A stretch of DNA of 64,000 nt from positions 7,564,001-7,628,000 of the forward strand of contig OZ287749.1 of NCBI GenBank assembly GCA_965649765.1. The letters run 5' to 3'. The DNA is from Bispira polyomma (Eukaryota). The notes beneath the pieces were generated by a model, which ran no database searches, was not told the origin of the DNA, and worked only from the letters and a program-made list of their open reading frames with translations. Both the position numbers and the translations under genes were made by a program. Shown here one piece after another: positions 42 to 63,200 of the stretch. Position 1 is the stretch's first letter; the number at the start of each line of letters is the position of its first letter.

Positions 42-209
42 CACTGTATCAGTCGCTCCAAGGAGTGGCAGGCCAAGTTGGAGCGTGGCCTTCACCTCTG
101 GAGACAGTTACAGGTGTGTGCTCAGCCCGTGGAGGAGTGTGTGACTGAGGCAGAGAATGTTCTAGAACAAGAAGGAGATCAAGTGGATGAACTTATCGCC
201 AGCCACAAG
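42..209 (+). CDS. SYNE1: nesprin-like exon 1 (HCISRSKEWQ...IASHK)
   Basis: ttctag/AAG-gtgaga, 168 nt, phase 0-0. Confidence 0.85.
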
Positions 210-3200
210 GTGAGATGGGTAGATGACACAGTTTTATTTAGATCTTAGTATTGGAGTATAGTAAGACCAGGGGGAGCTATGTCAAATTTAAAGTTATTTT
301 ACCACGGTTTCTTGGGTGTAAAGCAAAGCCTGATATTTTTACTAATCCTCACAAACATGGCAATTTTACCACCATTTCTATTACATCACCACCAAGGCAA
401 GTTTAATACTCGTGACTCCCAACAGGCGGCATTTGACCTATTATCCCCTCTGTTTTGGCGGTATGTGACCTACTGTACCTTTCTTTACTTAGTATCTGAC
501 CTATTTTTCCTCCTATTTAGACAGTATTTGACCTGGTTTACCTTTCTTCGGGTAGTATTTGACCTATTTTCCGTCTTCATTTACGCAGTTTTTGACCTGG
601 TTTACCTTTCTTAAGGTGGTATTTGACCTGGTTTATCTTTCGTTAGACTGCATTTGACCTATTTCTTGTCTATGTAGGCGTTATTTGACCTACTTTTCTT
701 TTTTGCTAGGCGGTGTTTGACCACATGGATGTGCGACTACTGCGTGAGTTTGAGAAGGCCGCCCAGGACTTGTTACAGGTGCTTGACGCTGAAGACAAAG
801 TGGACTTAGAACAGAGTATGAACACCCTTTCAGAAAGGTGGCAGGTAAGAAAGGAAAGACTCTCTCGGATTCTGCAGAATTCTAACACTCAGGCTCAGAT
901 CAAAGGTGTCCAGATGGAGGGAAGTAACGACAAGTATGATTGCATAGTTGGATGCTGCGTAGAAAGCTCTTCTAACATCCATAGCTTATTTCTATCTTCA
1001 TGAGTTGCTCATAGCTCTCATTTGAAATGAGTTTAAATTGTGCCCTGAAATATATCTGTAGTAAAACTCACTGTCTCGGACAGGTTGCAGGTGAAAAAAG
1101 AATGGATCTCTAAAATCTGTAATAAAACTCACTGCAGGCTGCACTTATCCAAGAATTTAACACCAATTTTGAGAATCGTTGTTGAGATATTTGATATATT
1201 TTAGTGTACATCTTTCCAATGTATAAACTGTAGCACCTATGTTGTCTTCACCTCTGTAAACATTATATGATTAAGTATAGCACAGGTCAGCTTATACAAG
1301 GATATCTGTGCGTTTCAGGAGCTACAGCACCATGCACCTCTGCGCCTCCTACGCCTAGAGTTCCAGGTGCCAGAGGAAGTATTTCTGGGACACCTGGGCG
1401 TTGCCGAGGGAACGTTAGCTGAGGAAAAACAAGGACTAGAGGAGAAAGCGAGCATTAAAGACTTGCTGAGGAAACACAAGGTAGAAATGTTGTGAAAGGG
1501 AATTTGAATTTATTTGGGTTTTACGTCACTTTCAACAGCTTAGGTCATATTATGAAAGGGCCATATCTAATGGTGGAAGAAAACAGTGCAGAACCACTGT
1601 AAACCACCGGCCTACGACAAGTACATGACAAACTTTTCCGGACGAAGGAATAAATGGGATGCGAACCCACATTGGTGAGAGGCCAGTGATTGTGAAGCAG
1701 GCGGTTCTAAACATTATGCCACCGTGGCCCCCTGTTTTGACAGAGAATTACAAGGTGTATTCGTCTTACAGGGAAGGACTTTATGGACTGAATTAGGAAA
1801 CATAAGGTTCAACTGCGACTTTTTGCAATGTTGTTAGATTTTCTGGTTGGAGGATAAATAATAAGGACTTCTAATGTGAGAAGGTCAGCACAGGGTTGAC
1901 AGTTCTGCATATGGCATCAACAAAGGTGCCTTGACTAACACTAAGTAGAGGGTTGTATGGGATTTTCTGGTTGGTTGTATAGTCGAACTTTGAAAATTCT
2001 GATAACTTTGCACTGTCAGGAAAACACCAAATGGCCAAACATAAGGGAGCTTGACCCGATGACCATACATCAAAAAGGTTGTCACCAGAAATGAATACGG
2101 CCAGGAATGATGTAGGATCACTATGTCAGTGAACATGTGTGTAAAATCTTTGATGTTTAGTAATGACAGTATATTTTCCTTTTCTACTATGTGATACATG
2201 TCTTTATGGCCTATTTTAGACTAACGTGTCAGATTCCTTATTCATTCCCCCCATTCTAATCCCTGTGCTTCAGGCGGTGTTTGAGGAGAGTGAGCTGGTT
2301 CCTGCCTGTGAGGGGGCCCTCTCACAGATGCAAGGACACAGCGACCGTCTGTTACAGTTAGAGCGTGAGGACACGTCTCTACAGGAAGCAGTGGAGGAGT
2401 ACACGCGCCGCTGGCAAGAAGTCCTCTCCTTGATACGGGACTTGTCACAGCGACTGGAACAGGTGCCTGAAAGGTGGAGGCAGTACAACACAAAGTAAGT
2501 GGAAATCAGGGTGTGGCGGAGAGTAAGTGATAATAGGGTGGAATACGAACTGAGTGAAAATAGGGGTAAAATAGGGAGTGGGTGATAATAGGGATATAAT
2601 ACAGAGTTAATAGATTGGTTTTCGTGTGTTATTTTTGTGTCTAATAGACTGGTTTTGACATGTTGTTTCTGTGTCTAATAGACTTGTTACCCTGTGTTGT
2701 AGGCTGGAGGAGTTTGTGGAATGGATGAATGGCGTGGAGGACACAGTGTCAGAATTAGAGAAGGAGAGTCTGTCAGTACAGGAGTATAAAGATACACTGG
2801 CCAAATTCCAGGTACATTTTAACTATACTAGACATGCATTCTGTGTACACTGGCCATTCTGTAATCATTATCAACAACTACAGGAACAGCCATCAGAGTG
2901 CCTACCTCCGCCAAGATGTCACAGTGACAGAAAGTAAACAAAAAAAAATTTTGATAAAATTCCTACATTTTCACTTCTAACTGGATCTGCTCCATTGGCA
3001 TCCCTGGTGATAAACAATTCGCCAAATGAATCAAGGGACATGGACGAAAATGTCACATCCTTAGCAGAGCCTTGATAGTTATATTTAAGTTCTGTGTCTG
3101 TTGACATTAAAGTTCTGCTACATCAAGATATTGAACACACGGTAGTTCTGTTGTAAACAGTCATATTTTTAGGCTTATACTAACGAAATATCAATAGTAG

Positions 3201-6200
3201 AGGCGTTCATGAATATTGAAAAAGAAAAATACAAACAAGTGTTTTGTGTGCATTTTAAACGTTCGATGGTGTGAAATTAATGTCACGAAGCCCGAACACA
3301 AGGTTAAGTATTTTATTCCTATTCTAAAATGGTGAAAGTTTAATTTTATCAAATAACAATTCTCATCTGAAAAATAATGACACTGTTCCATGTTATGGCT
3401 GTTCCATCATATGAACATACAGGACAACAGAGTTTACAAAACAAAAACCATTGAAAATACCCCCCCAAACAAAAACCATTGAAAATACCCCCCCAAAAAA
3501 ATGCCAACTATTTACTAGTAATCAAAAATTACTGAAAGATTAATTGATTGCGATTACAGTGCTTTTTGTTGCATCAAATTCTGTCCAGGAAATGGCTGAG
3601 ATATTTAAGTTTCCTTAAAAGTACCCATCATTTTATGAATATGGATGGAACAGCCCTGCTTTATTTACAGTGTTTTATACAGAATTTATACATTGCACGA
3701 AAGACGTGTTCATGGGCGTTGTTCAGCCTATGATTTTAGAATATGTGTTTGAGAATAAACGCTCAATAGTACATGTACATACACATACAAAGGTGAAGTA
3801 ATTTCTTCCATTAACCTTGATTGTAGCAAATGATAACTCCCAGGTTTGAGGTAAGTCTGCTGCTGTCACTGTTTTGACATCTATCTGTTAGTGACGTGTA
3901 CTAACACCCCAGTTTTGCTGTGAATACAAAGATGTAATCTGAATTAATATATTTATTATACACACTGAAAGGAACTGATTTCAATAGAAGCTGGTTTGTT
4001 TCCGCAATCTATTTCTAGTTGCACCATCTACATTGGTTTTTAAAATTTTAAAAGTTTTGTTATTAAAACACATGCTGAATTTGAGTGTTTGATAACTGCA
4101 CGTTTTGCTGATTAATAGATTTACACAAAGTATATGGCTGAGAGAGTTTGATGAGGCACAGATTTTTGTGAAGTATGCGAGTTAGATGTGACCGGCGTTT
4201 GGCTGGAGCAATTCAAATAGAGTCAAAAACTAGAAGTTCCAAGATGAAATGTGAAAGTGTATTTTCAATCCCTAAAATTCTCATATGAAATTTTTGCTGT
4301 AAAAGACCGACTAATTGGCTATTATCTTGTAAACAAAAAGAAAAAAAGAAAATGGTATGTTGTGATTCTAAAATTTAATCTTCTATATTGTTGTACAGCA
4401 GTACTGCTTTGAAAAACACGATGCATTTCACTTAGGTTAAAATTTGTCAGTCATGATCTAGTTATATAGTATATGTAGTTTGATCATAGGAGCAATTATA
4501 TTTATTCCAAATTTTTTTAGGAATAAAATCTCCCACTGCCTTGCAGTCTTTTACTGATACTCTTTTATATTCCACACAGAACGTGGTACAGAACATAGAA
4601 TCTCAGCGTGGCGACGCCAAGTGGTTGAAGACAACACTAAAGGAGCTACTAGAGACTGCGTCCGCCCAGGAGGCCCAGTTAGAACAACAGCGACTGGACA
4701 CCATACTGGCCCGATACAAAACACTAATGCCGGCCATTGAGATCACCACTACACGCTCATCTATGGTGGTCAGGTCATATGACTTTAAGGAAGACATGGA
4801 GAGAAAGACCGACTGGCTCAAGGTCACAGAGGACAAACTAGCTGTAAGTGTTAGAGGGGGTTCAAGTTCACTGGGGACAATATGGCTGTAAGTGTTAGAT
4901 GGGGTTCAAGGTCACTGGGGACAATCTGGGTGTAAGTATTAGATGGGATTCAAGGTCACTGAGTACAGTATGGCTGTAAGTGTTAGAGAGGGTTCAATGT
5001 CACTGGGAATAAACTGGCTGTAAGTCTAGGGGGTTCAAGGTCACTAGGGATAATCTGGCTGTAAGTGTCAGAGGGGGTTCAAGGTCACTGAGTATAAACT
5101 GGCTGTAAGTGTTTGACAGGGCTCAAGGTCACAGAATTCAAACTGGCTGTAAGTGTTTGACAGGGCTCAAGGTCACAGAATTCAAACTGGCTGTAAGTTT
5201 TTAAAAATATATGGGATCACGTTCTATGATATGTGTCATAGTTACTTCACTAGCATCCTCACTTCGGCATTGTTTTTCATGCAAAACAATGTGGGAATAA
5301 GTAGTATAGTTCTAAATATGCACTTTTCATAATGTAGTCTATTGCCCATAGAAATAAGTTAAATATGTGAGAATAGTAAAAAGCAAGTACTTTATATGTA
5401 AGAAATCATGGTAGAACATCAATCCTCTTCAGCTGTGAATTGTGCGGATGTGTTTACATTGAGACAAAGGCTGTAGGCAATATTTACAAAAGTATTTGGT
5501 CTACGCGAATGCTAATATAGTTGTAAATTTTGAAGGATTTTATATACACATCTTTTGGTTAATTGATTCTATTGGTGCACTTAAGATGATCGTGTCAATT
5601 ATTCGCATTAAAAATGCACAATATAATACACATATTTTGCATACATAAATATTGTTCATAAATAAATAATATGTAAATAATGTTTCAGGATGACCTTGCT
5701 ATGGATGACCTTGCCTCAGTCCGGGTGTTGCTAGAAGAACAAGCCCAAATCTTAGCCAAACTGGAGCAGGAGAAGCCTAACCTCCAGACTGACATTGCTC
5801 AAGGTCGCCGGATGCTTCGGGATGAGAATGCTCCGGATTTCTTGCAGGAAACTGTCGGGGATCTGGAGGAGCGCCTGGTTGAGGCAGAGAAGATGGCTCG
5901 GCTCAAAATGGCGCGATTACAGGAAGGGGCGCAAAACTGGGAGAGTTACGAGACTGGTAAATCTCAGTTACAGGACTTCCTGCGAAGAGCCGAGATAGAG
6001 GCTGGACGTAAAGCGCCCCCTGGTGGCCAAGAGACCATACAGAAGGAACTGACCGCCAAACAGGAAATGATGGTCGCGATACAAGACTTACAGCCCGAAG
6101 TGGACAAACTGAATGTGCTCGGTAAGACATTACAAGAGACCGCCAGCGAGGCAGCCCAGGATAGTCTGAAACAGGAAGTCGTCACTATACAGGAACGGAT

Positions 6201-9200
6201 GGAGGCATTAACACTCCGACTAACTGAAAGAGTGACGGATCTACAGCAAGGTGACTCCAAGTGGACAGAGTTCTACACACAGCTCAACATGTTCTCTGAT
6301 TGGCTGGCGGAAAAACAACAGGAACTAAAGGAGATTCACGAGAGTGAAGCCACGCCAGACCAGCAGTTTGACCAGGCCAAGGTATGTACATATTTCTACA
6401 AATCTGGACACACTTAGGGATGACCCAGGTAAAAACAACTACAGGTCCCTTGCATGGTTGTACTAAAGGGTTACTAGGTTATATGTATCACCAACCCACG
6501 GGCCATAGGATAGGCATATGTTTTGCTCACTTAAGGGCTACAGGATAGTCATATGTATCGTCACTCAAGGGCCATTGGATAGTCATAGGTTTGACCAGAT
6601 TGAAGATGATAAGTAGTAGAGATTAAACATACAAACGATATAACTGACACTGTGAATTGTAATTTCTAAAGTGGGCGTCTGTTACTCCAGTTCAACTAAT
6701 AACCTGTACCATTGTTAATACTTTCAGTTCTCTTAATTAGACATCTGACCTACTGTTTCATGTTGTCTTTCTACAGGTGGTCTGTTCTGAGATCTTTGAC
6801 AACCATGTTGGTTTGGAGCGTCTCGAGGAAGCTGGTGGTGACTTGGCCGCGGGCTACAGGTCTCGGGAGACTGCGGCGGTCAGATCTAAACTAGCCACAC
6901 TGAGAAGGTCATGGGAGAGTCTGTGTTCTCAAGCTAAAGACAGGTACGGGAGATCTATATGGAATAGAACCCTCTGTATAGTAAATGTACAATAAAATCT
7001 GTGTACACTAGATAGATGCCAGAACCTTGGTTATATCATCAAGGTCTTTCGTTACTAGAGTATACACATAAAGTTGTATCTGGGCGAGGTCGAAGTTGAA
7101 ATTTAGTTTTAATCTCAAGGTTGTTGACTAGCAACCGATGCTATTTGTTACTCCTAGAATCTATTTCTGTTGTCAACACCCCAAAAATGGTGTTTTCTTT
7201 TTGCTCCAGAAGTCAACAAAAAAGGGGTTAACAAACATCAACAGTTAGAAACCTAATCGATTTGACATCATCTCTGCAGTAGTTTCACAAGTTTGATTAT
7301 AGTCAGCCCTACTAATACTTTGATGTTCCAGATATCACAGACTATTGATCCCTTGTTATTCCAATCTATTGATGCTTTCTAGTCTCTTTATGTTCCATTT
7401 CTCCCAGCTCTAGTAACCATTCCAGTGTGACATTATTTTCCCAGGCACTTTGCTGTGTTTTCATCATGTTTTATCCTCTATTTATCCAGGTTCAGCAGTC
7501 AATGATACTTTTGTTTTGCTTTTCTTACTTACACAGGTCTAGCAGTCTGTCTAGTGATGTTACACACTGGCACCAGTACCAGAACATGGTCCAGCACCTG
7601 TTACCATGGTTAGACTCAGCAGAGCGCCACCTAGACGATGTACCAGAGAAAGCCAGTAGTCAGAACGAGGCTCAGCAGATGTACGAACAGCACCAGGTGT
7701 GTGTGTTTGTGTGTACAGTAAAACCTTCCTTAGTGAACACCTCAGAATAGTGAACACATCAGAATAGTGAACACATCAGAATAGTGAACACCTCAGAATA
7801 GTGAACACCTTAGAATAGTGTACACCTTTGCTAGTGAGACAAAGAATAGTGAACACCTCTGATAGTGAACACCTCAGAATAGTGAACACCTCAGAATAGT
7901 AATCACCTCAGACTAGTGAACACCTTAGAATAGTAAACACCTCAGAATAGTAAACACCTCAGAATAGTGAACACCTTAGAATAGTGTACACCTTTGCTAG
8001 TGAGACAAAGAATAGTGAACACCTCTGATAGTGAACACCTCAGAATAGTGAACACCTCAGAATAGTAATCACCTCAGACTAGTGAACACCTTAGAATAGT
8101 GAACACCTCAGAATAGTAAACACCTCAGAATAGTGAACACCTTAGAATAGTGTACACCTTTGCTAGTGAGACAAAGAATAGTGAACACCTCTGATAGTGA
8201 ACACCTCAGAATAGTGAACACCTCAGAATAGTAATCACCTCAGACTAGTGAACACCTTAGAATAGTAAACACCTCAGAATAGTAAACACCTCAGAATAGT
8301 GAACACCTCAGAATAGTGAACACCTCAGACTAGTAAAACACATTTGAAAAGTGAACACCTCAGAATAGTGAACACCTTAGACTAGTGAACACCTCAGAAT
8401 AGTGAACACCTTAGACTAGTGAACACCTCATAATAGTGAACACCTCAGACTAGTGAACACCTCTCCACAATGAACTATTTATCACTGCCCTGTCAAACCA
8501 CCAATTGTACAGTACCTCTGAATAATGAACGCAATACCTCTGAATAGTGCATGCAGTACCTCTGGATACTGCACGCAGTACCTCTGAATAGTGAACCTAA
8601 AGTCAACTTATAAAGAGTTGAAATCTCTTGCCCTGGGGCCGTTGGGCCTATGTTACTATCGTTCACTGGTTATATGAGTTCTTAAACAAGAGGTGTGGTA
8701 CATAAAACATAAATACAGCAATATTAACACAGTAAAATTTTGTGGAGATTCATATTCTGTTTACTAGGGAAGCTGCAAACCAAAATAAACCGAAGTTTGC
8801 AACACTTACGTCTGCTGCACTGGTGTTTTTCTTTAGTCAATGAATAACTTATCCCATCTTGTTTTTGTTTGACAGGTGTTTCTTGGTGAGCGAGATGAAC
8901 ACAGTGATCTATACGATCGTCTTCTGGCAGAGGCAGGTCACTTGACTGACAAGCCGCAGGTGTCTGAGGACCTTGCCCAAATACAGACCCGCTGGGCGAC
9001 CATGTACACAGGCTCTGAGGAGCGCGGTGCTAGTGTGGGGAAGGCTGTGGAGGGCTGGGCCCAGTATAGGGCTGCTGTGGTACAGGTGGAGGATCTACTG
9101 GGAAAGTTTACTGAGAAACTGGTGGCGCCACCTGTGGTCAATACTGTGGAACTAGAGAGCTTACAGTCGGAGCTCTCGCTCTGTATGGTCAGTTGGCCTA

Positions 9201-12200
9201 TTCTTAGAGTTTTGTCTCAGCCAGTTAGATTGGCTAAAAAATATTTATAGAATCTTATCCTTGGTGTGCTGTATATCCAGGACGTAAGTAAGCATATAGT
9301 AACTGACTAAAATTAATAGTACCTTACAAATATATATGCATTTTAATACGTAATTCGATATATCCTGTGCTTGATTAATTATACTGACAATATTTATTTT
9401 TCTCTCAACAAAAATCACAGTTTTAAATAATCAAAACAAATGGGAAACACCGATCCACAAACCCGAAGGCCCCTCGATATCAAGTACACAAACTATATAT
9501 GAACTGTAGAATATTTGTGAATACTCTCCTAGCAGATCAAGCCTATTTTAGCTTACGTAACCCAACTTTCCAGTTAAAGTCCTCTTCACTCCGTAAACTG
9601 TTTTCCATTTTTTCACAGGCTGTTGCTGAGGAGTGCCACATCAACAAGAGTGCCATGGCAACACTAAACCAGGCCAAAGTACAGCTGGAGCCCCAACTCA
9701 ACCCAATGGGGGTCAACCAGGTCAACACAGAATGCTCTGCCCTCTCAAGGTCGTACAGTGACCTTGAAGGTCAGACCGACGCCAGGGTTCAGACGGTGAG
9801 GGAAGCCTTAGAGGAGAAGAGAGAGTTCTGGAACCGCTGGGAGGCGTTTGAGAAATGGCTGGGGAGAACACAGAAGAAACTCAGTGCAACCAATGAGATT
9901 TACTCCGATGACATGAAAGGAGCAGCCAAGAAACTTGAGGTGGGTGGTCTGTTGGACTGTGTTAGATGATTGGCTCTTAATAAAGCGTTAACTGATTATA
10001 TTATGTGTACAGGTAAAAAATGTTTCTTTTAGCTCACTTGACAAAAAATCTTTCATGTGGAAAATTATTAGTGAAGCATAAGTATGACATGTAATATAAC
10101 TACAGTATGACCTCTATTTTACGGCCATCTTGGGAAAGTGAGAATTTGCTTGAATAAAAGAAGGTCCGTTAAAATAGAAGTGGCATTTTAGTTTAAAACA
10201 ATAGCAAAAGATTTTTCAAAGAATTTTATTCTTAGAGTTTTGTCTTAGCCAGTTAAATTGGCTAAACATATTTTTTTAAATAATCTTATCGGCTAGGAGA
10301 AACAAAATCATTGCATTTTATCATAAAACAATAGCAAAAATATGTTTGGGAGAGTGACATTGAGTTTGTAAAATGGAATATTTGGATAATAGAGGGTCGG
10401 ATAATAGAGGGTAGGATAATAGAGCGTCGCATAATAGAGGGTTGGATAATAGAGGGTCGTATAATGAAGGGTCGGGTAATAGAGGGTCTATTGTATTTTT
10501 AAAAAGAGGTTGGATACATGAGGCATAAACCCTGTAATTAGAACACAAATTATGAATTAAGTTATAAGACTTGTTACATGGCATTTGGTGAACTTAACTA
10601 TGAACTGAATCCTTTTTGTCAGGTAATTTTTTAAAGCTTTGTGCATTTTTTTAAATCACAATGTGTTAATGTAAATCTTAATTGAGACATAAATTTGTCA
10701 ATATATATATACTGCATTATTGTTTCCAAATTCGAACCCATGGTGCTCATTTTCATGTTTAAAATACAAAAAGAACTTAGTATTTTTTTTTCCCAAAGAT
10801 TATTCTAGTTATATCTTTTACAATGGGCGCTGTGGATGCGCAGTAAGGGATATCACCTCCTAATACAGCAGGGCAGTTTCATATTTAATTTGGTCGCTTT
10901 TATAAATCTAGTCCTCACATTTCTCTCTTTACATTACATTTCCACAGGCCATTGAGGCGGAGTGTAAGACCCACGAGCCGGAGTTTGGCCAGCTCAGTAA
11001 GGATGTGCAGAGTTACCTGAGCTCTATACCCGAGTCTGAGCGAGACCCCCTCAATGAGCAGTACGTGGCACTGAGAGACGCCTTTGAGCAGCTACAGACA
11101 CTACTGGACTGTCGCGTTGAGCTGTGCGGAGAGTGGGGTCAATTCAGTGTAGTCCACAAAGACACAACGGCCAGAGCCAAGGCCCTACAGCAGAGGATGG
11201 AGTCACGTGACCTCACACAGGACGACCTCAACCAGATCAACGACGAACTGGCTGATGTTCAGGTAAGGGCGGAAGTCACCAGACATTTATAGGAATTCTC
11301 AACACTTCATTTATAGACCGTTCACACTGTCCGCGTTCTCGGAGCAGTTCTTCACTCATTCTAAGAACGTATGAGAACTTGAACAAACGTTTGAGAATGG
11401 GCCAAAAACGGGGGTGAAACTGGGGCGAACGAACAGGAGCTACAGCCGGACATTTTTAACATGTTCAAAGCTTCCGTGGGTGGATAGCTCTGAAAGCACA
11501 TCTTGAGAGAACTTGAGAAAACGGCAAAACTGCTCAGAACTTGTGTAAAACTGCTAAAATTTGTGTGATCTGGCCAGAACTGGAGAGAACTTTAGAAAAC
11601 GTAACATGACCTTGGCATAAACGGGGGTAAATGGGGGTAAAACTGGTCAAAAACGGGGGATGCAAATATATGCAAGTGCAAATGAGAATTTTCCCGCCTT
11701 TCCTATGAAATTCCTCAGGTCTTGAGTAAATAGCAATGCCGTGGCGTGAACTTGGACAATGTGTATGCACCATAAGTTGGTGTTACAGTGAAACTTGCAT
11801 GTAAATACAAACACCCAAAGGAACCCTCAAACAGGATCTTTATTGACAGGTGCTCTTCATATAGAGGTTGATTATTGCTATGAATACCAATTTTCAGGGA
11901 AGACTAATATTTCAATGAAGACCGCTAATTCAATGAAGACCACTTTTCAAGGTTCTCTTGTAATCTTGTAATCACTGTATATTATTCCTGATCAATAATT
12001 TTTTATGCAACTATCAAAAACAAAAGATGAATTGGAAATTCCCGCAATCTCACTGTTTGAAAACTGTAATTGCAACACCTAAATTTGTCCCTTTTCTCGA
12101 TTGTATCGATTTTGTAAATGTAAGTTTGTGATATATGTGTTTGTACTGTGTATGTAATGTAATGTGCGCTGTTTTTGTGAAAATTAAAAAAAACCCACAA

Positions 12201-51200: not shown

Positions 51201-54200
51201 CTATTTCAAAGTGTACTAGATATGTCAAATTTATTTTTAAATTTGAATTTAATTTTAAATTCGAGTATGTAATAGAAACCTGTGGCCGTATTCTCGAAAG
51301 GAACTCCAGCTCAAACTCAGACTCAACTCAAGTGACGGCCTATGTGAAAGTCATTGTATCTAGACGTAACCTGTACTTATTACCATTTATTTTAATAGAG
51401 TTTTCAGTGCTGAATTCAAATATGCACTCAGATTTTACTTAACTTAACCCTAGCCAGAGATAAGTGAACTTTTATTTTGAGTCTGAGTTGAGCTTGAGAT
51501 CTTTTGAGAATATGGCCACAGTAGTATAGATTTGAGAACAGCCCTTGTTGTGTGTGTGTGTCACCAGTGTATGCCCTTAGTGCTCGAGTTTGTTCCTGCT
51601 TTGGTGATTGGAATTTACAAACGTTTATGTGTAAAGTTTTGGGGGCATGACAATTAGTGATGCTGGTTTTATTAGTGGGTAAATTGTTTGGGTTGGTGGA
51701 GATCGATATCGAACATGAAATTACTTCAGCCGATATATCAGCCGATATTAGGACACAGAAAAGAAAGTTGTGAAGAAACTAGAATGTATTTCCAAAACGA
51801 AAAACCTGCCTGAATAAAACTGGAAGTGAAAACCGCTAAATATGTTTACAAGTGAAAATGGACTTAAAATGGACATCACTTATTATTTAAAAGGTATTAA
51901 CCATAAAATAAAATAAAAAGTGTTGTATAAATGTTGTCCCAAGGTGTAATATGTGTCTATTATGATATGTCTATGTGTCTGTTATGTGTTTGTATTACAC
52001 ATCGATATTGGCACGCAAAAGCCCGAACAATAAATAAATATCGGTGATATGGATAAACAATTTACTCACTAGGTTTTACTAAACTTTGCGCCTTAGAATT
52101 TGATAGCGCCTTAGAAGTTGAAAAATCCAAAATAGACACCTACAGTCCCAGTCTGAGTTTACAACTAAATATCTAAATAGAAAAATATATTTCTTATACT
52201 CCCAGTTATTTTTAGTCTAGGCATCCATTCCTCAAAAAATTACATTGGCTTGCCATTCATTATCAAATTCTGCTTAAAAATCCTTCTACCTCGCTACTCG
52301 TCTTTCCTCCAGTAACCTCAACAGAGGAAAGAGACTTCCTGTTTCCTCTGTATAACCCACCACGAGGGCTGGATCTAGAGCTTTCTGAAGCGCTGCCCCT
52401 AGGTTATAGAATGGTCTTCCAGTCTAGGTTAGATTACTAGAAACACTTTCTGGATTTAGGAATAAATTTTTTTAGTTCCCTCGCATCCTTCCTTTAGAAG
52501 ATGCCTCGTATTGTAAGACTCTAATTGTCATATTATTTCTGTGTGTAAAAATATGTTTTTGTAAAACCCCTCAAAAAAAAAATTGTTAAATTTTAAGGGC
52601 AAACAGGTTAAATATTAGTCAGATTGATCCTGTTGATTGCATGCTTGGTTTTGGGAAACTTCAATGTAGATATTGCAGATTAATAGCTTTGTGGCTGTCA
52701 TACTTTTGCGTGCTCCGCCAAAGAATGTTTGTATCTCTTCGCTTGTTTGCCATATGGATTATTACACAAAAACTAGTGGACTGATGTACATGAAATTTGG
52801 TGGAGGAATGTGATATGGAAGATTTCATCAAAATTTGGAGTGGATTCTGATAGCAGTTTAAGGAAAAAAAATTCTACACTTTTGACACTTTGGTCATGTG
52901 TGGTGCCCTGGCGGAGGTATGCACTCTACTGAATGGCCCTTGTAGGTTGTACTTTATTTGCCGTTTAATGATGAAGGCATCAAAAATTTACTTTATCCGG
53001 TTTCTTCCACCATTAAATCTGCCCTTCGTGATATTGGCCTAAGCTGTTAAAAGTGATGTGAAACCCAACTAAATTCAAATTCTGAAGCTCTTCACTTTAA
53101 GGACTTTGTAGTGTTTTGTGTAGCATGTCAGATGTCATAAATCCTAAATTAGTATTGCAGTTTGATTTGAATTATTCGTATTCAGAAAAGCATGGAATGC
53201 TTGCAGTATTTTTTGTTTCATCCATATATCATTAATTTCTGTGAATTAAACTCTTACAATCGTTATTTGTTCTACAGACACGATTTGTCTCAACTCTTTG
53301 TAACTTTGCTGCCTTTTCATGTCTTTTTTTATATTAGTTATGTTTGACCTATGATTATTAGATGACCTTTGGCCTCATTTTGAAAAACGAGATGGTAGTT
53401 GTGTCAACTTTTTTACTGATGATGTTTTGCAGCTCCGGTGGATACAACATGCATTTGTCCTCCTATTCAATCTGTCTAATGTTGTTATATTCACAAATAT
53501 TCATTCATATCTTGGCCATTAAATTGTAGCCTGTCTATTAGTATAGAGGTTTGTTTCAGCTTTTGATACAAATATGTCTGACAGGGTAATATTCCTTTTT
53601 TTGTTCACAGATCCAATCTGTAAAAGTGTCTAGTCAGCAAGCGACAGTGACCGCTGCTAATGAGCGAGGAGTGACCTTGACCCAAGCTACCCATGACCCT
53701 CAGATACAAAGTGACACCACTCAAGTGGTCAAACGCTATAATGTGGTCAGACAGACCGCAAAGGTGGGTGGTCAGTATGCTTCACAGGTGACCGAGAGGG
53801 GAATGTAGAAAAACAGTTTAAATTTTTAGGCAAATTATCAGCGAGATAGATATGTGCAGTGTAAACTTCTTTGAGTGAAACATTGTAAAGTTAGCTTTGT
53901 CTTTAAATGGAGAAAAGTCTGTGGTCCCTTGAAGGCCTTTACTATTAAATTGTACTTTGTGTTAAGTGGAATACCTGCTAAAGTAGAAGTACTTCTCGTG
54001 GTCCATTGAGGTTCTACTTAAAAGGGTTTAAGTGTATCGGAGTCGAGTTCTTAGAAAATTAATATTTGATGTAATATTACAATCTGTAATTCTACAAATT
54101 TGTGGTTATATTGACTGCACAATAAAAATCCAGGCTCTAAATTTCAAAATTTGTACTTTTACTACAGACATTAAGTGCTTGAACCTCACATTAGTTTAAA

Positions 54201-57200
54201 GTGTTTATGAAGCATTCCTGCCTTGATGCCGAGTCTTATGTTCTTTTCCTACAGGATCTAGAAAGTCACTGTGATCATGTGACCCACGAACACCAGCAGT
54301 ACCAGGATGTGTACCAAGACGCACGTGATTGGCTGACAGCGGCACAGGACCGACTAGTGGCGTGTGCTGATATACATGGAGATAGACATAGTCTACAGGC
54401 CAAATATCAAAAGGTAGGGGGCACTAGTGTGTGTAACAAAAAGTAGGGGGTGCTAGTGTGTGTAACAAAAGGTAGGGGGCGTTAGTGTGTGTAACAAAAG
54501 GTAGGGGGCGCTAGTGTGTGTAACAAAAGGTAGGGGGCGCTAGTGTGTGTAACAAAAGGTAGGGGGCGCTAGAGTGTGTAACAAAAGGTAGGGGGCGCTA
54601 GTGTGTGTAACAAAAGGTAGGGGGCGCTAGTGTGCTGATATACACAGAGATAGCGTTGCTTGTGACAAGGTTTGGGTTTCTGTTAATTTTGTGGTGCCTC
54701 GTGTGTGTAGTGATAACGCACTCGTCTCCCATCTCTGCAGTCTTGGGTTCCATTATCAGCCCTAGCATGTATCTGGAAAATTGGCAGTAAATTTGCTGAA
54801 GGCCGGTGGTTTACAGAGCAGAAAAACTCTGATCAACTACCCTTGTTATGATTTACTCCATTAGTGAACTGTCCGTCGTGATATGACAGAAGACTTCTTT
54901 ATAGCGACATTAAACACAAACTAAAATAATATAGACCCCTTAATGTACTACTTTTGTTCATGTGATCTGTGTATTTTTAGGCAGGTGACTTGGCGGCCAC
55001 ACGTTCTGTTGGTGAGGCCAAACTACGTCAAGTCCAGGACCGAGGGGCAGCCACTCTGACCAATACATCAGCCAAGGGTCAGGAGAGTCTGAGACAGGAG
55101 ATGAAGTCATTGACGGAGGACTTTAGTCACTGGACCAGTAGTGTGACAGAGACATCCACTCAGTTAGGTAAGGAGGGTATATTAAGTGTTAGGTCATAGA
55201 TTGGCGAAGGACTTTAGTCACTGGACCAGTAGTGTGAAAGAGACATCCACACAGTTAGATAAGGAGGTTGGAGTAAGGGTGGTAGGTCATAGATTAGCTG
55301 AATGTCTGAATGATTACATTAGGATGGGCTGATAGAGTTAGGTAAGGGTGGTGTAGTTTTGTCGAGTATTGCATTGGACAAAAAGTTTTGGTAGTAATAA
55401 CAGGTCCAATACAAGATGCATGTCCAAACAAGGAAGTGTTTCCATTTACAGAACGCCTGCTGTCACAGTGGGGTGAATATGACCGTAGTTATGAGGACCT
55501 GAGTCACTGGCTCAAGGATATGGAGGTCAAGGTCAAAGCCTCGACTGAACTCCAGCCCACTCTGGTGGAGAAAAAGGCTCTACTCAACAAATACAAGGTA
55601 TGTGTGTATTTAATGGGTGCAAAGTTTTGACAGGTACAAGGTTTGCATGTGCTTTACAAGGTATGTGTGTACTTAACAGATTCAAGGTACAAAACTTAAC
55701 TATGTGTGTACTTTACAAGGTACCTGTGTACTTAACAAGATATGTGCAGATATGTGTTTACTTTATAAGGTATGTGTGTACTTTATAAGGTACGTGTATA
55801 CTTTACAGATGTAAGGTATGTGGGTACTTTACAATTACAAGGTATGCATGTACTTTACAAGGTGTGTGTGCACTTTACAGATTTAAGGTATACGTGTACT
55901 TTACTAATAAGTACAAAATATCTGTATGTAATAACCACTCAAATTTAGGTGTATTTTTGCAATGTTAATTGGTTCCTAGCTTATATTTATCCATGTTTAA
56001 TATGGGAATTAAATTTAAACCTCTATTACACTGGTCTGACTGTAGGATTACCAGGAGGAGGTGAAGGTAAAGCAGCTTACATTTGACGGTCTGACTGATA
56101 AGACGCAGGTGTTACTGCAGAGTAGTTCAGACTCCCGTATTACAGCTCAACTCACACAACTCAACTCTAGATACACAGCACTGCTGGCCTATGTAAAGGT
56201 AAGGTATTGATACAGGTAGATATACAACACTGCTGGCCTATGTAAAGGTAAGGTATTAATACAGGTAGATATACAGCACTACTGGCCTATGTAAAGGTAA
56301 GGTATTGATACAGGTAGATATACAACACTGCTGGCTTATGTAAAGGTAAGGTATTGATACAGGTAGATATACAACACTGCTGGCATATGTAAAGGTAAGG
56401 TATTGATACAGGTAGGTATACAGCACTGCTGGCTTATGTAAAGGTAAGCCATTAATACAGGTAGATATACAGCACTGCTGGCCTATGTCAAGGTGAGCTA
56501 TTGATATAGGTAGGTATATAGTTCTGCTGGCTTTTGTAAAGGTGAGATATTAATGCAAGTAAAAGATAGGTATACAACTCTGCTGGAGGTTAAATAAAAT
56601 TTATTTGACTTTAGCCATGAAACCGCTTCTACAATGCAAACTTACAAATATAGGTTGTGTCTACTTCCACCTAGTCTTTGTTTCCGTCTTCCAAAAATTT
56701 GTTCACTGGTGTAGTCTTTCCTGTAGTGCAAAATACGATGTAGTTATGGCATGTTACCTTTTCTTCCTTCAGGACACTGTAAAGAAGTTAGAACAGCATG
56801 TGGAGGACCACCAGCAGTATAAGGAGGCTCACAGTCGCTGTTCCACCTGGTTAACATCTCACCACGAGAGGCTGTCCTCTCTGGCCGACACGGGGGGTGA
56901 CAGGGACATGGTCCAAGGTCAACTGGACAAACTCCACGACTTCCTGGTGATGAAGGAGGAGGGTCAAACCCTTATGCACACTGCTGCCACCTGGGGAGAA
57001 AAAAGCATGACGAGTACGTCTGGCGAAGGACGGGAGACGATACAGAGACAGCTACACGCTCTACAGCAAGCCTGGGACGGGTTTATGACTGGAATTAGTG
57101 ATACTAGGACAGCACTGGAGACACAGGTGGGTGGGAGGAGGGGGTGGGGGTAAGGGTGTGTGAGGGTTGGGGTATGAGGGTGGGGGGAATAGATGCAAAG

Positions 57201-60200
57201 GACATATTTAAGGAATAATCCACGACAAATCAAGGGTATATGATACTTATATATTTGGAAGTGTAGGAACAAAAGATGAAGCCTGAGTTTCTGCTACAGT
57301 GATAAAATTACCCTATATCCTGGTTTGGATGGGTTATTACGACTGTAACATGAAATGTCAAAATTAGTATCTAAATGGTGAAATGTTAAATTAAATAAAT
57401 ATTAGTGGAGGAATTATTTCACTGAGCGTAAGAAATATTATGGAGATTATATATTATCGGCCATTGCAAGGTTGTAGTCGGTGACCTAAGCTCATCCTGT
57501 TAGAATTGTTGCTTGCACATACTATTTTTATATGTAGCTTCTACAGTGGAGTGAGTTTGATGAAAACTTTGAGCAAATCCAGCGCTGGCTGAAGGACATG
57601 GAAAGGAGGTCACGTGACCCAGAACCGAGAACTGACCTTGGGGAAAAGAGGGCGCAGTTACAGAAGGTCAAGGTGAGCTTTCTAGTATAGTGGTAATGAT
57701 GAACACAAACAGAATTTCTAGGGATTGAATTGAAAGATACCAAAATTTCAATCCAAACTCTGTAGACTTGTGTATTCGGTATATAAACAGCTGGTAACCT
57801 GCATGTACCTGGTTTGTATTAGCAATATAACATGTATTAAATTCAAGCTTTAAAGTTAAGTTTGTGTAAACTATTCAAGCAGGTTTAAAGCATTCCTCCA
57901 TCTACGCTGAGAACAACAAAATATCGGGTACATACTAACACTTTTGTACAACATTTTTGTGAATTGTTGCAGTCGGCTTTTATAACGAGCATAAAATACT
58001 TTATAATAAAAAAAAAACTATGGTAAATCTTTGGATACAAGGAGACGTGTGTTGTTATTAGGGATTTGTGTTAAGAAGTTTAACCCTACATCAGAAAATC
58101 CTTGATTATCACCCGTTGAAGCTAATAGCCGTAAAAAACAGGTTTTAATATTGGGGGACACTGGTTCGGTTAACCCGGAGATTTTGATAAACAGAGGTCA
58201 GATAATCGGGCTCCTTCAGTACATGTATATCTATAGATTAAGTCCTCTGGGGCCGTATTCACGAAGGGACTTAGCCAGGTCTTAGGCTTAAATCAGTATA
58301 CTTTTGTGCTAGATTTAAGCCTAAGACCTGGCTAAGTCCTTTTGTGAATACAGGGCCAGGTACCTGCAAAGCTTACTCTCTATTATTCTAGTCAAGCTGC
58401 TTCCTTTAAGCTTTTTAGTCAAGTGCTTGTCGTTTTCCCATTAGGCTTTGTACCAGGATATCGTGGCTTATGACCACGTGATCGACTCCACAAAGGTGAA
58501 GGCCCAGGAACTGGTGGTTACCAGCCCGAGAAGCCAGGTGGCGCCACGTAGCAGTGACATCGTGAAACGCTACTTCACGTTAAAGGAGAAAGTAAAGGTA
58601 GGATTGCATGTGCATGAAACCCCTGCATGGGTTGTGTAGACATTGTTAGAACAGGGGGCCAGATTTAAGACAAGTCTTTGGGCAGCAGTGGCCAAATGTT
58701 AAGACAAAATTTCTAACTTTACGCCTAAGATTGATTGAAAGCAGTCACTGAATCAAGATTGGAAAAAGGGACAATAGTTTAGTCAAATTATCTATATCTT
58801 GGTTAAATATTAAGCATTTTATGGTATTCAAGGGAAATCGTTTTGCGTATCATGTGATAACTAATTTGGTTGTGAAATTCATATTGATGTAACTACTTAG
58901 GTTGTGATAGAAATCAGTATATTTGGTTGTACTTAAGCTGTTTCTATGTAAGCCATTTGTATGCTATTGCTTTATAAGATGCTACTTTTCAGGTATAATT
59001 CAGTCAGTATATAATTAACTGGTTTTCTAGTAAAAAATCACATTTTTAAGACAGCTTCTTGTTCACCCTGTTGCAATAGGAATTGATCTCTGTAATTGGT
59101 ATTGTATTTGGAACAAACACTGTTGCCGTGGTAACTCTCTGGCACTATAGGAACAAGTCTCTGTTCTCAAGAGAAAGGTATTTTTACACTGTTATTATGA
59201 TAAGTCTCTGTCACAATAGGAACAAGTATTTAGTGCCGAGAGGAAGGTATACACTGTTGCTATGGTAACTCTGTTGCTATAGTAACAAATCTCTGTCGTC
59301 AAGAGATAGGTATTGTATACATTGTTGCTATGGTAACTCTGTTGCTATTTGAACAAGTCTCAGTTGCTGTGATGCAGGTATTGTATACACAGTTGTTATG
59401 GTAACTCTCTGTTGCTATAGGAACAAGTCTCTGTTGCTGAGAGAGAGGTAGAGGACCATGAGATGTTTGTGAGCACCTGCCAACACTTCAACACCTGGTT
59501 ACGGGTCGCTAGGGAGAAACTGGCCACGTGTAGTGATACTTACGGAGACAAGATTACAGTTCAGAGCAAGATGGATAAAGTGAAGGTGAGTAGTCGGAGG
59601 GCAAAGATTTTGGGATTTGGGTGTTCTATATCATGGTGAAATCATTAGTAGTTATTTTGGGTAATGGGAAAATTATTCTTTATGTTGGAATCAAAAAAGC
59701 AAAAAGATACATATGATCATGTTAAACTTTGCTGTGGTAGAATTAATGTGTGTAAGAAATTTAGAAGTATTCTATCTCTATTCAAATTTTATTAAAATAA
59801 CATAATTTCCTTAATGAACATCTGGTACTTGACGAATAATTTTTTAATCCAAGGGCCTACATTTTGTGATAGAAGAGCCAGACTCTATCTACGGTTTTAT
59901 ATGCATATTTTCTGCACTGTGAAGACACTGTACTGTACAGCCTCACATATTAGATTTAAGTTTAGTGTTTATACTTGGTCACAGATTACATTTTCTGTGA
60001 GTATAATAGTAATTATACAGTGTAGTGTATGCTAAAGGTAGCAGTTGTAACTTATACAGTGTAGTGTATGTTAAAGGTAGCAGTTGTAGATAAGTAGAAT
60101 GGTGACTGGGGTTATTACCGTAAAACCTATATTATCTTAATATGTTGCGAGAGCAAGATTTTGTTTAGATAGTAGAATGTTCATAGAAGAGAAGAGGCTT

Positions 60201-63200
60201 TTTAGTACAAAACAATAAGAAAACAGAAAATTGGCAGAGTGAACATGAGTACATTAAATGGAGTATCTGGACAATAGATGTTCGGTCAATAGAGGTTCTA
60301 ATATACCTTTTCAAGTCAAATTCCATTCCTTTAATCATGTAACCCAAACCATCTATGAATCCTAAAAAGTACACGTGCAGGTAGTTTACAAAATTTGATC
60401 TTCCTCATAATTTGGATAAAAAAAATTGTATCCGTAAAACACTGCGCTAGAAAGTATTTCATTAAATCATTCCTACAACATGAACTAAAATTTAAAATGT
60501 CTTTTCTGCAGACCTTGAAGGAGAACCTGAGTGATGGAGCCGACCACTTAGCTAAGGTGAAGGACGCCAGTGGTCAGGTGACTGCCACCACCTCAAGGTC
60601 AGGTCAAGGGCGTATCAAACAGGACGTACAGCTCCTCACCCAGGACTACGACGATTTTAAGACACAAGTGAATTCCGCTCACACCGCCCTGGATACATGC
60701 TTAAGCAGGTACAGTGGGGGTGTACAGTACAATACTATAGTGTACTCTGTTTACTTAGTTCTCAAAAAGTAGTGTATTGTGCTATGTTTACTCAGTGGAT
60801 TAATACAATATTGTAAAGTATTTACTTTGATTACTAAGCAAGACTCAGCAGTTCAGCAGAAAACAAAGGCCAGTTGATACAGTTGTAATTTAATGAAATA
60901 CTTGTTAACTTCCCATGTGTCTTGAGGTATGCCCAGACTGTAGTTTGAAAGGTTGTTCTCCTAAAGGCCTGAGTACTTCTCTATTTATTGAGGTATTCAG
61001 TCACTCCATGTAAAAATCTCACTATGTTCCCTCACAGGTGGTCATATTACGAGGATGTGGTTCTAGTTTAGTATGTTCCCCTGTAGGTGGTCACATTACG
61101 ACGAAGCCCAGGAGAGATTTTCTGATTGGCTGCGTGAAGAGGAGTGTCATCTGAAGAGAGAGTTACCAGCCCAGGCCTCTCTGTTGGATATGGAGACACA
61201 GTATGCAGAGTGTCAGGTAGGGTGTATACTAAAACACAACCACGTACAAACTGTGATAGAGTTTTGTTTAACTTATCAGTTTTGTGCATGGTTTTTCACT
61301 CACCCAAAGGTATATGTGGCTTCTATTACCTGAACACTATCTTGCTCTGAGCAATGCTTGTACTGTATCAGTGTTACTTTTACAAAATTACCCAAGATGT
61401 TGAAGGTGATGTAAAACTAAAGTAAATCCAAATAGATTCCTACTTTTAGTAGAGCCACAGTAAGGGCTGTTACACTGCTTTCACAAAACACCTTTCCCAA
61501 AGGACTTGGGAACTACAACATTTTTTAGATGGTAGAGTCACCTGATTGTGGTGGCAAGCTAATTCAGTGGTAATTAACAGCTATACTACTTGGTAGGATA
61601 CTTCCTAATTAAGTATCTATAGGCGCTTTTTCAAACAGATGTCTCTTTTCCTTAATTTTCCTCTATTCTTGTGACTTTAAAACATCAAACTGAGATGACT
61701 AGCAGCCTACTGTTGAGTCTGAGTAATTAACAGGTGGCCCATAACCTTTTGCTGTAATAAAACATTGGTGATCCCCGAAAGTCCAGCTATCCTCACCCAA
61801 ATTGGTTTTAATGTACACCCAAGGTTCTTTACTGCCTTCAGTTCTCAGGAACTAATCAAAAGCCCTTTTATGTCATATATATATATCAAGTTTTATTAGA
61901 AATAGTAAGTATGACTATCTATCTCTGTGGCCCAATGGGGCCCTTGATTCTGTTCTTGTTGTATGTACCCTCATGGGCCTCTCCTTTCTCTTCTTGTTGT
62001 ATCTACCTCTGCATATATATCTATCACCACAGACTGAACACCAAACTGTTCTCACCCATCAGACTGAGATGGACCAGGTATCTCAGAATGCTCAGCTCTT
62101 ACTGGAGACAAACTCTGACGCCAGGATCTCTCACTCCATGACCCAACTCACTGCCAGGTACCAGAACCTGCTGTCTGTGGCTAAGGTAAGTTCTCTTAGC
62201 TAACTGCTTCATACTTTATTCTGTTCTTGTCTTCTATAACATAATTTTTGGCTGGCACTATTATCTGTCACGCAATGTAAAATTCGAAACACTAGCGGTC
62301 CTCACCCATGATTCAAAATTGTGGTCTATGTCAAAATTATCTGGTGACTATACAAATGTTTTATTCTGTTATACTTTGTTAGTACTATATCTCATGGGGG
62401 TCAAAACACCATTGATCCTTTTCAGGATAAGAAATCGTAGTTTAGGGACAAAACCATGTCTTGAGGAAAATATCGTAGTACCCTGTCGACAGCCTTGATA
62501 AAGTGATTTAAGGATTATTGACAAATGAATTATTTGTAATTGGTCAGCTGAGCAGTCGTGATGTAACCTAGAGAACGAAACAGTTTGCTGTATTGGTCAT
62601 TGTGTTGGATAGCACTGTCAGTTTGTGTTTTAATTGCCTTATATTTTTTAAGACTGATCTTCAAAACGTCTAAAATTCAGTTGATGGTCACCTCAGGCTA
62701 ACTACTAATCATTCACTTTAGGGTTGTCAGAAAAGTGTAAAACCCAACCATTAAATCCTTCAATTGATAGTCACGTTTAAATTTGTTATTCCCATTTAAA
62801 CCTCTAATTCATTTATAGATCACCTTAAAAATTGTTAGTTCCAGCTTCAGTTTGTTTAGTTTACAACCAAAAATGTGTGTAACATTTATTACAGGATCAG
62901 CAGAAACGCCTAGAAGGTCAGTGTAGTGATATGAGGCGCTATCAGTATGCTGTTGACGATTTGACGGCCTGGTTAGATGCCAGTGAACAGAAACTACAGG
63001 AAGTGAGCAACCCGAGTGGCAGTAGAGAGGAAGTGGAGGCTCGGCTCACCAGAACTCGGGTAAATGGTCTGGGGGGGTAAAATGTAGAGAGAATGTCAGG
63101 TGTGAGAAGGTTAGGCGTGAGAAGGTCAAGTGTAAGAAGGTTAGGTGTGAGAAGGTTAGGTGTGAGACGGTTAGGTGTGAGACGGTTAGGTGTGAGACGG

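What the first reader, a model, noticed from the sequence alone, without database searches (positions are those of the whole stretch)
421..61090. Pervasive splice-site echoes: exon edges plus their splice sites are tandemly amplified into the introns
Seen directly: more than 20 of 57 donors (exons 2, 6, 14, 16, 20, 23, 25-30, 32, 36, 37, 39, 41, 42, 46-49) are followed by 1-12 copies of their own exon end plus GT site. About 7 acceptors (exons 2, 21, 37, 44, 53, 55, and weakly 5 and 58) are preceded by copies of their own acceptor region. Every unit is locus-specific (about 20-160 bp) and copies range from near-identical to heavily decayed, so this is a recurring process and not one TE family. 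The functional site is always the exon-proximal copy. Intron interiors show far fewer locus-specific duplications. Inference: either a mutational mechanism centred on splice junctions (transcription/splicing-coupled breaks repaired by microhomology-mediated template slippage), or a high general duplication rate filtered by selection. It implies a spliceosome that must ignore arrays of near-perfect decoy sites. I cannot verify whether this has already been described.
Basis: partly seen in the sequence, partly recalled or inferred. Interest (0 to 1): 0.9.

Follow-up and report, generated by a model that had tools for sequence, protein, structure and literature searches.

The report
Splice-site tandem echoes in fan worm
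In one very large gene of what is most likely a fan worm, about one exon end in four has been copied head-to-tail into the next intron, the pattern called 'mirages' in amphioxus, at about seven times the rate for intron interiors, which suggests exon ends are duplication hot spots whose copies the splicing machinery tolerates.

Summary
Real, not an artefact, and of a described kind. The window is 58 exons (4,353 open codons) of a nesprin-1/MSP-300-like gene, most likely from a sabellid fan worm. 19-21 of 57 donors carry tandem copies of their own exon end plus GT in the intron; about 5-6 acceptors do. With predicted flank exons of the same gene, 32/118 donors (27%) echo against 3.9% of deep-intron points (6.9x; 11.5x for the best-matching copies). 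Acceptors (9/117) and intronic pseudo-donors (5/97) are near background. Contigs from three sequencing runs match the echoes exactly. A relative about 1.0 substitutions per four-fold site away keeps every exon border checked and has its own echoes (9/55 donors), mostly with its own synonymous states; distant orthologs have 0/46. Copies decay neutrally, GT is not purged, and only 1/31 first decoys keeps an open frame. This matches amphioxus 'mirage' minisatellites and human F7-type VNTRs. What is new is the lineage, the density and a measured donor-specific excess. The trigger is inferred, not shown; only one gene was tested and no RNA was available.

The parts
42..64000 (+). 58 coding exons of a nesprin-1/MSP-300-like spectrin-repeat gene (4,353 aa open; the gene runs beyond both window ends)
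   Evidence: borders of exons 1-54 conserved in the sister species
424..730 (+). exon 2 acceptor array, 31-nt unit, about 9 decayed copies (just under threshold)
4815..5198 (+). exon 6 donor echo, 44 nt x 8.7
13453..13710 (+). exon 14 donor echo, 160-nt unit, one copy, 79% identical
16055..16122 (+). exon 16 donor echo, 43-nt unit, one copy
18915..19115 (+). exon 20 donor echo, 45 nt x 4.5; the only first decoy that keeps an open frame
19285..19362 (+). exon 21 acceptor-side repeat (intron tail only, AG not included)
21605..22577 (+). exon 23 donor echo, about 126-nt unit with 22-66 nt sub-arrays
29294..29430 (+). exon 25 decayed exon-tail copy; junction itself lost
29829..30101 (+). exon 26 donor echo, three decayed copies (78%)
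30733..31100 (+). exon 27 donor echo, 139 nt x 2.6, 94%
31426..31577 (+). exon 28 donor echo, 73 nt x 2.1, 6-nt overhang
32101..32225 (+). exon 29 donor echo, 69-nt unit
33157..33480 (+). exon 30 donor echo, about 124-134 nt unit, three junction copies
34580..34690 (+). exon 32 weak donor echo (mostly intronic, 44 nt)
40763..40941 (+). exon 36 donor echo, about 101-106 nt unit, 93%
41165..41560 (+). exon 37 acceptor echo (decayed)
41736..41970 (+). exon 37 donor echo, decayed, GT lost
43217..43600 (+). exon 39 donor echo, 120-nt unit, followed by a 41-nt G-rich array at 43674-44002
48012..48105 (+). exon 41 weak donor echo, 70-nt unit
48226..48307 (+). exon 42 acceptor echo, 41 nt x 2
48409..48636 (+). 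exon 42 donor echo, 49/97-nt units
49310..49800 (+). exon 44 acceptor echo, two upstream copies of acceptor plus exon start
54408..54655 (+). exon 46 donor array, 29 nt x 7.8; a 77-80% similar array lies at the same place in the sister species
55109..55295 (+). exon 47 donor echo, 91 nt x 2
55590..55904 (+). exon 48 donor echo, 20-26 nt units
56168..56551 (+). exon 49 donor echo, 49 nt x 7.8
59117..59450 (+). exon 53 acceptor array, 68 nt x 4.8
61020..61105 (+). exon 55 acceptor echo, about 49-nt unit

Best explanation
These are 'mirage'-type minisatellites: ordinary head-to-tail DNA duplications (median unit about 70 nt) that straddle an exon-intron border. In this lineage they arise several times more often across functional 5' splice sites than in intron interiors. 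SHOWN: the excess at real donors; DNA-level tandem geometry with both exon and intron sequence in each unit; repeated independent origin in two species; neutral decay of the copies. INFERRED: (1) the exon end and the G-rich intron head are a local slippage or break hot spot, probably because of transcription and early spliceosome assembly there (R-loop or pausing); (2) a seed duplication is expanded and homogenised by normal minisatellite turnover; (3) donor echoes persist because the most upstream donor is used and the rest is spliced out; (4) acceptor echoes are either made less often or more often purged. The copies are tolerated by-products, not a splicing device.
For: 32/118 donors vs 3.9% deep-intron first copies (6.9x; still p=0.001 against 4x background); 11.5x for the best-matching class. 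Out-of-window replication 13/61 donors. TRF: 19 vs 4.05 expected. Strong pseudo-donors in introns 5/97 sense, 2/52 antisense, so the motif alone does nothing; G content shifts background only from 3.4% to 5.5%. Sister species 9/55 vs 2.9%; at shared donors 36, 39, 47 the echoes carry own-species synonymous states. Mismatch 0.10 at codon positions 1-2, 0.21 at position 3, 0.07-0.09 at GT (p=0.18 vs positions 1-2); CpG transitions doubled (p=0.036); 1/31 first decoys keeps an open frame. Purely intronic arrays also cluster within 40 nt of junctions (13 vs 5.2 expected, p=0.003). Non-echo intron heads are G-skewed (G 0.33, C 0.11 in the first 20 nt, which include the donor motif; still 0.25 vs 0.14 at 20-40 nt). 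Upstream-donor choice shown for human F7 (PMC1557585).
Against: All statistics come from one gene; the flank exons are model predictions. No RNA run, so which donor is spliced is inferred from orthology. Breakpoints are not pinned to the splice site (exon share of unit 0.09-0.96), so nothing directly ties the event to splicing. Overhangs at two-copy events are mixed (-14 to +14 nt) and do not prove microhomology. An exon-wide high duplication rate with purging of exon-internal and acceptor events gives a similar picture. The exon 46 array is more conserved between species than neutral decay predicts.
Confidence: 0.58

Rival explanations
1. Exon DNA as a whole (GC-rich, methylated) duplicates faster than AT-rich intron DNA. 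Duplications inside exons and across acceptors are removed by selection, and only those that run out across a donor survive. No link to the splice site itself.
For: Units hold more exon than intron (median share about 0.63, KS p=0.05, though detection favours this); exon interiors carry no surviving upstream copies; CpG decay points to methylated exons; acceptor-spanning arrays 2 vs 4 expected; echo donors are slightly stronger than others (p=0.02), as a tolerance filter predicts.
Against: Wholly intronic arrays also start within 40 nt after donors (7 vs 2.6 expected); G-rich intron points duplicate only slightly more often.
Confidence: 0.24
2. Uniform duplication rate; junction copies only look enriched because the exon copy is conserved and cannot be deleted, so the pair stays recognisable longer.
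For: The 1:2 mismatch ratio of codon positions 1-2 to position 3 shows the exon partner is frozen; this could explain the weak acceptor signal (1.6x).
Against: That bias is at most about 2x; the observed 6.9x rejects 2x, 3x and 4x background; the excess is greatest for the best-matching copies; acceptors share the bias but not the excess; the background is overestimated because it includes echoes of unannotated exons.
Confidence: 0.06
3. Echo arrays are selected regulatory elements: extra U1 or other protein binding sites that strengthen exon definition, tune splicing or supply fail-safe donors.
For: 119/139 decoys keep GT and 87 score within 1 unit of the real site; mismatch at -3..+2 is a little lower than at codon positions 1-2 (0.089 vs 0.119, p=0.12); the exon 46 array persists in both species.
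Against: Positions mostly differ between species (both 6, focal only 15, sister only 4, neither 28; p=0.17); decay fits neutrality; 30/31 first decoys would shift frame or stop; orthologs do without (0/46).
Confidence: 0.08
4. RNA-templated events (reverse-transcribed pre-mRNA or splicing intermediates) are inserted next to their source.
For: Donor specificity and same-strand orientation would fit a splicing intermediate.
Against: Units include intron sequence of variable length (2-90 nt in most) and no copy joins two exons or ends exactly at the junction; geometry is plain tandem.
Confidence: 0.03
5. Assembly artefact.
For: None.
Against: Run contigs match; copies are diverged with codon-position structure; an independent assembly of another species has its own echoes.
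Confidence: 0.01

Closest known systems
Amphioxus 'mirage' minisatellites (Adh3, globins BflGb6/9, PGBD5, troponin C; PMC3087553, PMC3902484, which cite Canestro et al. 2002)
   Same: Locus-specific tandem copies of an exon-intron boundary at 5' or 3' sites; units 10-160 nt; several copies at 81-100% identity; splice signals kept in many copies; origin unexplained.
   Different: Here an annelid; about 27% of donors of one gene; enrichment measured against intron interiors and donor-specific; turnover shown between two species. Length polymorphism, somatic instability and normal splicing by RT-PCR, reported for amphioxus, were not tested here.
Human boundary-spanning VNTRs: F7 intron 7 (37 nt), CBS intron 13, 6-16 gene intron 2, lamin B2, PDGF (PMC1557585)
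   Same: First unit spans the donor; identical pseudo-donors follow; the most upstream site (sometimes the next one or two) is used.
   Different: Scattered single cases in human, against about one donor in four here.
Intron gain by tandem genomic duplication (Rogers 1989 as cited in PMC3087553; PMC3265369)
   Same: Tandem duplication of a segment holding splice signals.
   Different: There a duplication inside an exon creates a new intron; here the unit spans an existing border and the copy is spliced out. No intron gain from an echo was shown here.

Membership tests
mirage minisatellites | tandem repeat whose unit spans an exon-intron boundary (exon edge, splice signal and intron edge) | tested here: met
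mirage minisatellites | unit is locus-specific, about 10-160 nt, copies about 80-100% identical | tested here: met
   units 29-160 nt, 74-100%; each query matches its own intron and none of 56 others; exon 46 unit found only here in the genome
mirage minisatellites | both donor and acceptor boundaries can be duplicated | tested here: met
   19-21 donors, 5-6 acceptors
mirage minisatellites | many copies keep GT/AG signals | tested here: met
   119 of 139 projected decoy donors keep GT
mirage minisatellites | mRNA is spliced at the authentic, exon-proximal site | tested here: inconclusive
   no RNA run held the stretch; exon-proximal borders give one open frame and match the sister species at exons 1-54
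mirage minisatellites | copy-number polymorphism or somatic instability | tested here: inconclusive
   the three runs show no differences over the echoes and are probably one animal; contigs break inside arrays
transposable element or dispersed satellite family | shared unit sequence across loci | tested here: not met
alternative 5' splice-site (exon extension) system | decoy use keeps the reading frame and positions are conserved | tested here: not met
   1/31 open; positions mostly species-specific
nesprin-1 / MSP-300 (host gene) | SYNE1-type spectrin repeats with N-terminal calponin-homology domains and C-terminal KASH | tested here: inconclusive
   PF25034 and PF00435 hits; best named relatives are nesprin-1-like; CH-like exons upstream; KASH not looked for
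Sabellinae (host animal) | mitochondrion with cox1-3, atp8, nad3 on one strand and the eight other protein genes on the opposite, G-rich strand (type III, PMC13602327) | tested here: met
   (cox1-3 and nad3 vs eight genes; atp8 not located); erythrocruorin linker genes present; species not identified

The most novel reading that the evidence does not exclude
Functional 5' splice sites are themselves germline mutagenic in sabellid worms: co-transcriptional events at the donor (U1 binding, polymerase pausing, R-loop on the G-rich intron head) trigger local tandem duplication at 5-10 times background, genome-wide, for as long as one neutral substitution per site has taken. The same process would explain amphioxus mirages.
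Probability: 0.3. Interest if true: 0.8.

Novelty: new member of a known kind. Interest (0 to 1): 0.52.

Why it matters
Mirages are known from a few amphioxus genes with no mechanism. A protostome lineage with about a quarter of donors affected, and a measured donor-only excess, turns that into a testable question: is there a mutational hot spot at 5' splice sites? It also gives many natural arrays of identical donors for testing how the first site is chosen, and raw material for tests of intron gain by duplication. In practice the echoes mislead gene predictors: my first model ran exons into echoes or called echo copies as exons.

Tried and rejected
The 180 kb of flanks turned out to be the same gene, and three short linker-gene loci held no informative donors. 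The spliced model was searched exon by exon by reference; the joined protein was only checked locally for an open frame and was not sent to any search. Purging of decoy GT: tested, not seen. In-frame bias of units: not seen (7/31). Donor motif or G content as the sole trigger: rejected. Shared hot-spot positions between species: not significant (p=0.17). CTCF-like reading of the exon 46 unit: the canonical pattern had no match in the genome, so unsupported. Microhomology: mixed, not established. Polymorphism: the runs were uninformative. The original 2002 mirage paper is not held and is cited second-hand. The published Sabellastarte assembly is 1,786 Mb, so it is not this genome. Literature searches found no report in annelids and no genome-wide count; the library is incomplete.
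Full report
What the window is. The window lies on contig C2 of a 1,035-Mb, 75-contig animal assembly. Its mitochondrion reads with the invertebrate code and carries cox1-3 and nad3 on one strand and eight other protein genes on the opposite, G-rich strand, the 'type III' layout described for Sabellinae fan worms (PMC13602327). Erythrocruorin linker genes are present. A sabellid is therefore likely; the species was not identified. The exons hit spectrin and SYNE1 spectrin families and the named relatives are nesprin-1-like. The gene appears to fill most of the 244 kb I could read. The model was searched exon by exon; the joined protein was not sent to any search.

Observation. Aligning each exon tail to its own intron and to the 56 others gave 18 clear donor echoes; a junction-centred test gave 19, adding exons 32, 41 and 48 and missing 25 and 37, whose junction copy has decayed. 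Together that is 21 donors. Five acceptors span the AG (37, 42, 44, 53, 55), exon 2 is just under threshold, and exons 5, 21, 56 repeat only the intron tail. Units are mostly 29-160 nt (median about 70), contain both exon and intron sequence, and are 74-100% identical to the source. Contigs built from three public runs cover 53900-59800, and the long contigs across the echoes show no differing letters. The runs are probably one animal and may be the source of the assembly, so they exclude assembly error but say nothing on polymorphism.

More than chance? The fair control for a donor is an intron point with a copy downstream and none upstream. That applies to 3.9% of deep-intron points against 32/118 donors (27%, 95% interval 19-36%), including 13/61 predicted donors outside the window. 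The excess survives a background multiplied by 4 (p=0.001) and rises with copy quality: 3.3x, 8.8x, 11.5x. Tandem Repeats Finder gives 19 donor-spanning arrays against 4.05 expected. Acceptors are near background (9/117 vs 4.9%; donor vs acceptor p=1e-4). Strong donor-like motifs deep in introns are at background (5/97), and G content moves the background only from 3.4% to 5.5%. The background is if anything too high, as it includes an echo at an unannotated exon. All of this is one gene. Unchecked notes from other windows of this genome describe the same pattern; they are leads, not support.

Comparison. An orthologous contig (ENA ERZ22147071, 84% amino-acid identity, about 1.0 substitutions per four-fold site) keeps the borders of exons 1-54 at the exon-proximal site; it lacks intron 12 and has extra introns inside exons 16 and 30. 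It has its own donor echoes (9/55 vs 2.9% background, p=3e-5), for example at exons 3, 21 and 43 where the focal species has none, and an acceptor array at exon 28. Sharing of positions is not significant (p=0.17). Where both species have an echo (36, 39, 47) the copies mostly carry their own species' synonymous states, so they arose or were refreshed after the split. Four more distant, unnamed orthologs show 0/46 (p=1e-5). The process is thus a long-lived trait of this lineage. One exception is the exon 46 array, 77-80% alike between species while other intron DNA does not align; it is unexplained.

Fate of the copies. Mismatch is 0.10 at codon positions 1-2 and 0.21 at position 3, as expected if the copy drifts while the exon is held by selection. 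GT positions (0.07-0.09) do not differ from positions 1-2 (p=0.18). CpG transitions are doubled. Decoys are therefore neither purged nor clearly conserved: 119/139 keep GT. Use of the first decoy would keep an open frame in 1 of 31 cases. This argues against a splicing device.

How it probably works. Shown: DNA-level tandem duplications across real donors occur or persist far more often than elsewhere, repeatedly, and decay neutrally. Inferred: the exon end and G-skewed intron head are a local slippage or break hot spot linked to transcription or early spliceosome assembly; seeds expand by ordinary minisatellite turnover; donor echoes are harmless because the most upstream donor is chosen, as shown for the human F7 array (PMC1557585); acceptor echoes are made less often or purged more. 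The main rival, a raised rate across exon DNA filtered by selection, is not excluded. Against it, purely intronic arrays also cluster within 40 nt of junctions (13 vs 5.2 expected). Breakpoints are not pinned to the junction and microhomology is not established.

Known or new. The structure is the 'mirage' of amphioxus (PMC3087553, PMC3902484), whose origin those authors call unclear, and it occurs in several human genes. The structural membership tests are met; normal splicing and length polymorphism could not be tested. I found no report from annelids and no measurement against intron interiors, within an incomplete library. Verdict: a new member of a known kind, with a density and donor-specific excess that make the open question of its origin testable. 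Interest 0.52.

Noticed in passing
window 23846-24020: Extra exon in the 6.7-kb intron 23, 87.5% identical in the sister species; reads about 53 codons to a stop, so possibly an alternative or terminal exon.
   Followed up: partly
window 36090-36211: Conserved 63-nt in-frame exon (36119-36181) in the 4.2-kb intron 34, 79% identical in the sister species; likely an alternative exon.
   Followed up: partly
window 45184-45270: Short intronic stretch 75% identical at the matching place in the sister species, inside intron 39; a candidate microexon.
   Followed up: no
window 54408-54655 and the matching sister intron (L030/L033): The exon 46 array is shared with the sister species, where it lies behind a different functional donor and is split by a reverse-transcriptase element of about 6.4 kb; more conserved than neutral decay predicts.
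   Followed up: partly
L001 10719-11190; L035 359-829 and 1135-2326; L001 7925/7926: The sister species has an extra intron in exon 16, two in exon 30 (one with its own 41-nt x 22 donor array) and lacks intron 12: intron turnover between the two species. Direction not established.
   Followed up: partly
window 7731-8463, 63089-63495, 43674-44002: Minisatellites that start 30-40 nt after a donor, or behind an echo, without clear exon sequence; the 15-nt unit at 63089 itself resembles a donor site.
   Followed up: partly
window 58245-58355: Short element at very high copy number (summed contig depth above 300,000); similar short repeats occur in many introns.
   Followed up: no
L004/L005 (mitochondrion, 15,503 nt): Two-strand gene layout matching the Sabellinae 'type III' pattern.
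   Followed up: partly
G000 C5 46.77 Mb and 17.74 Mb: Two dynein heavy-chain loci with near-identical exon spacing, perhaps a recent gene duplication.
   Followed up: no
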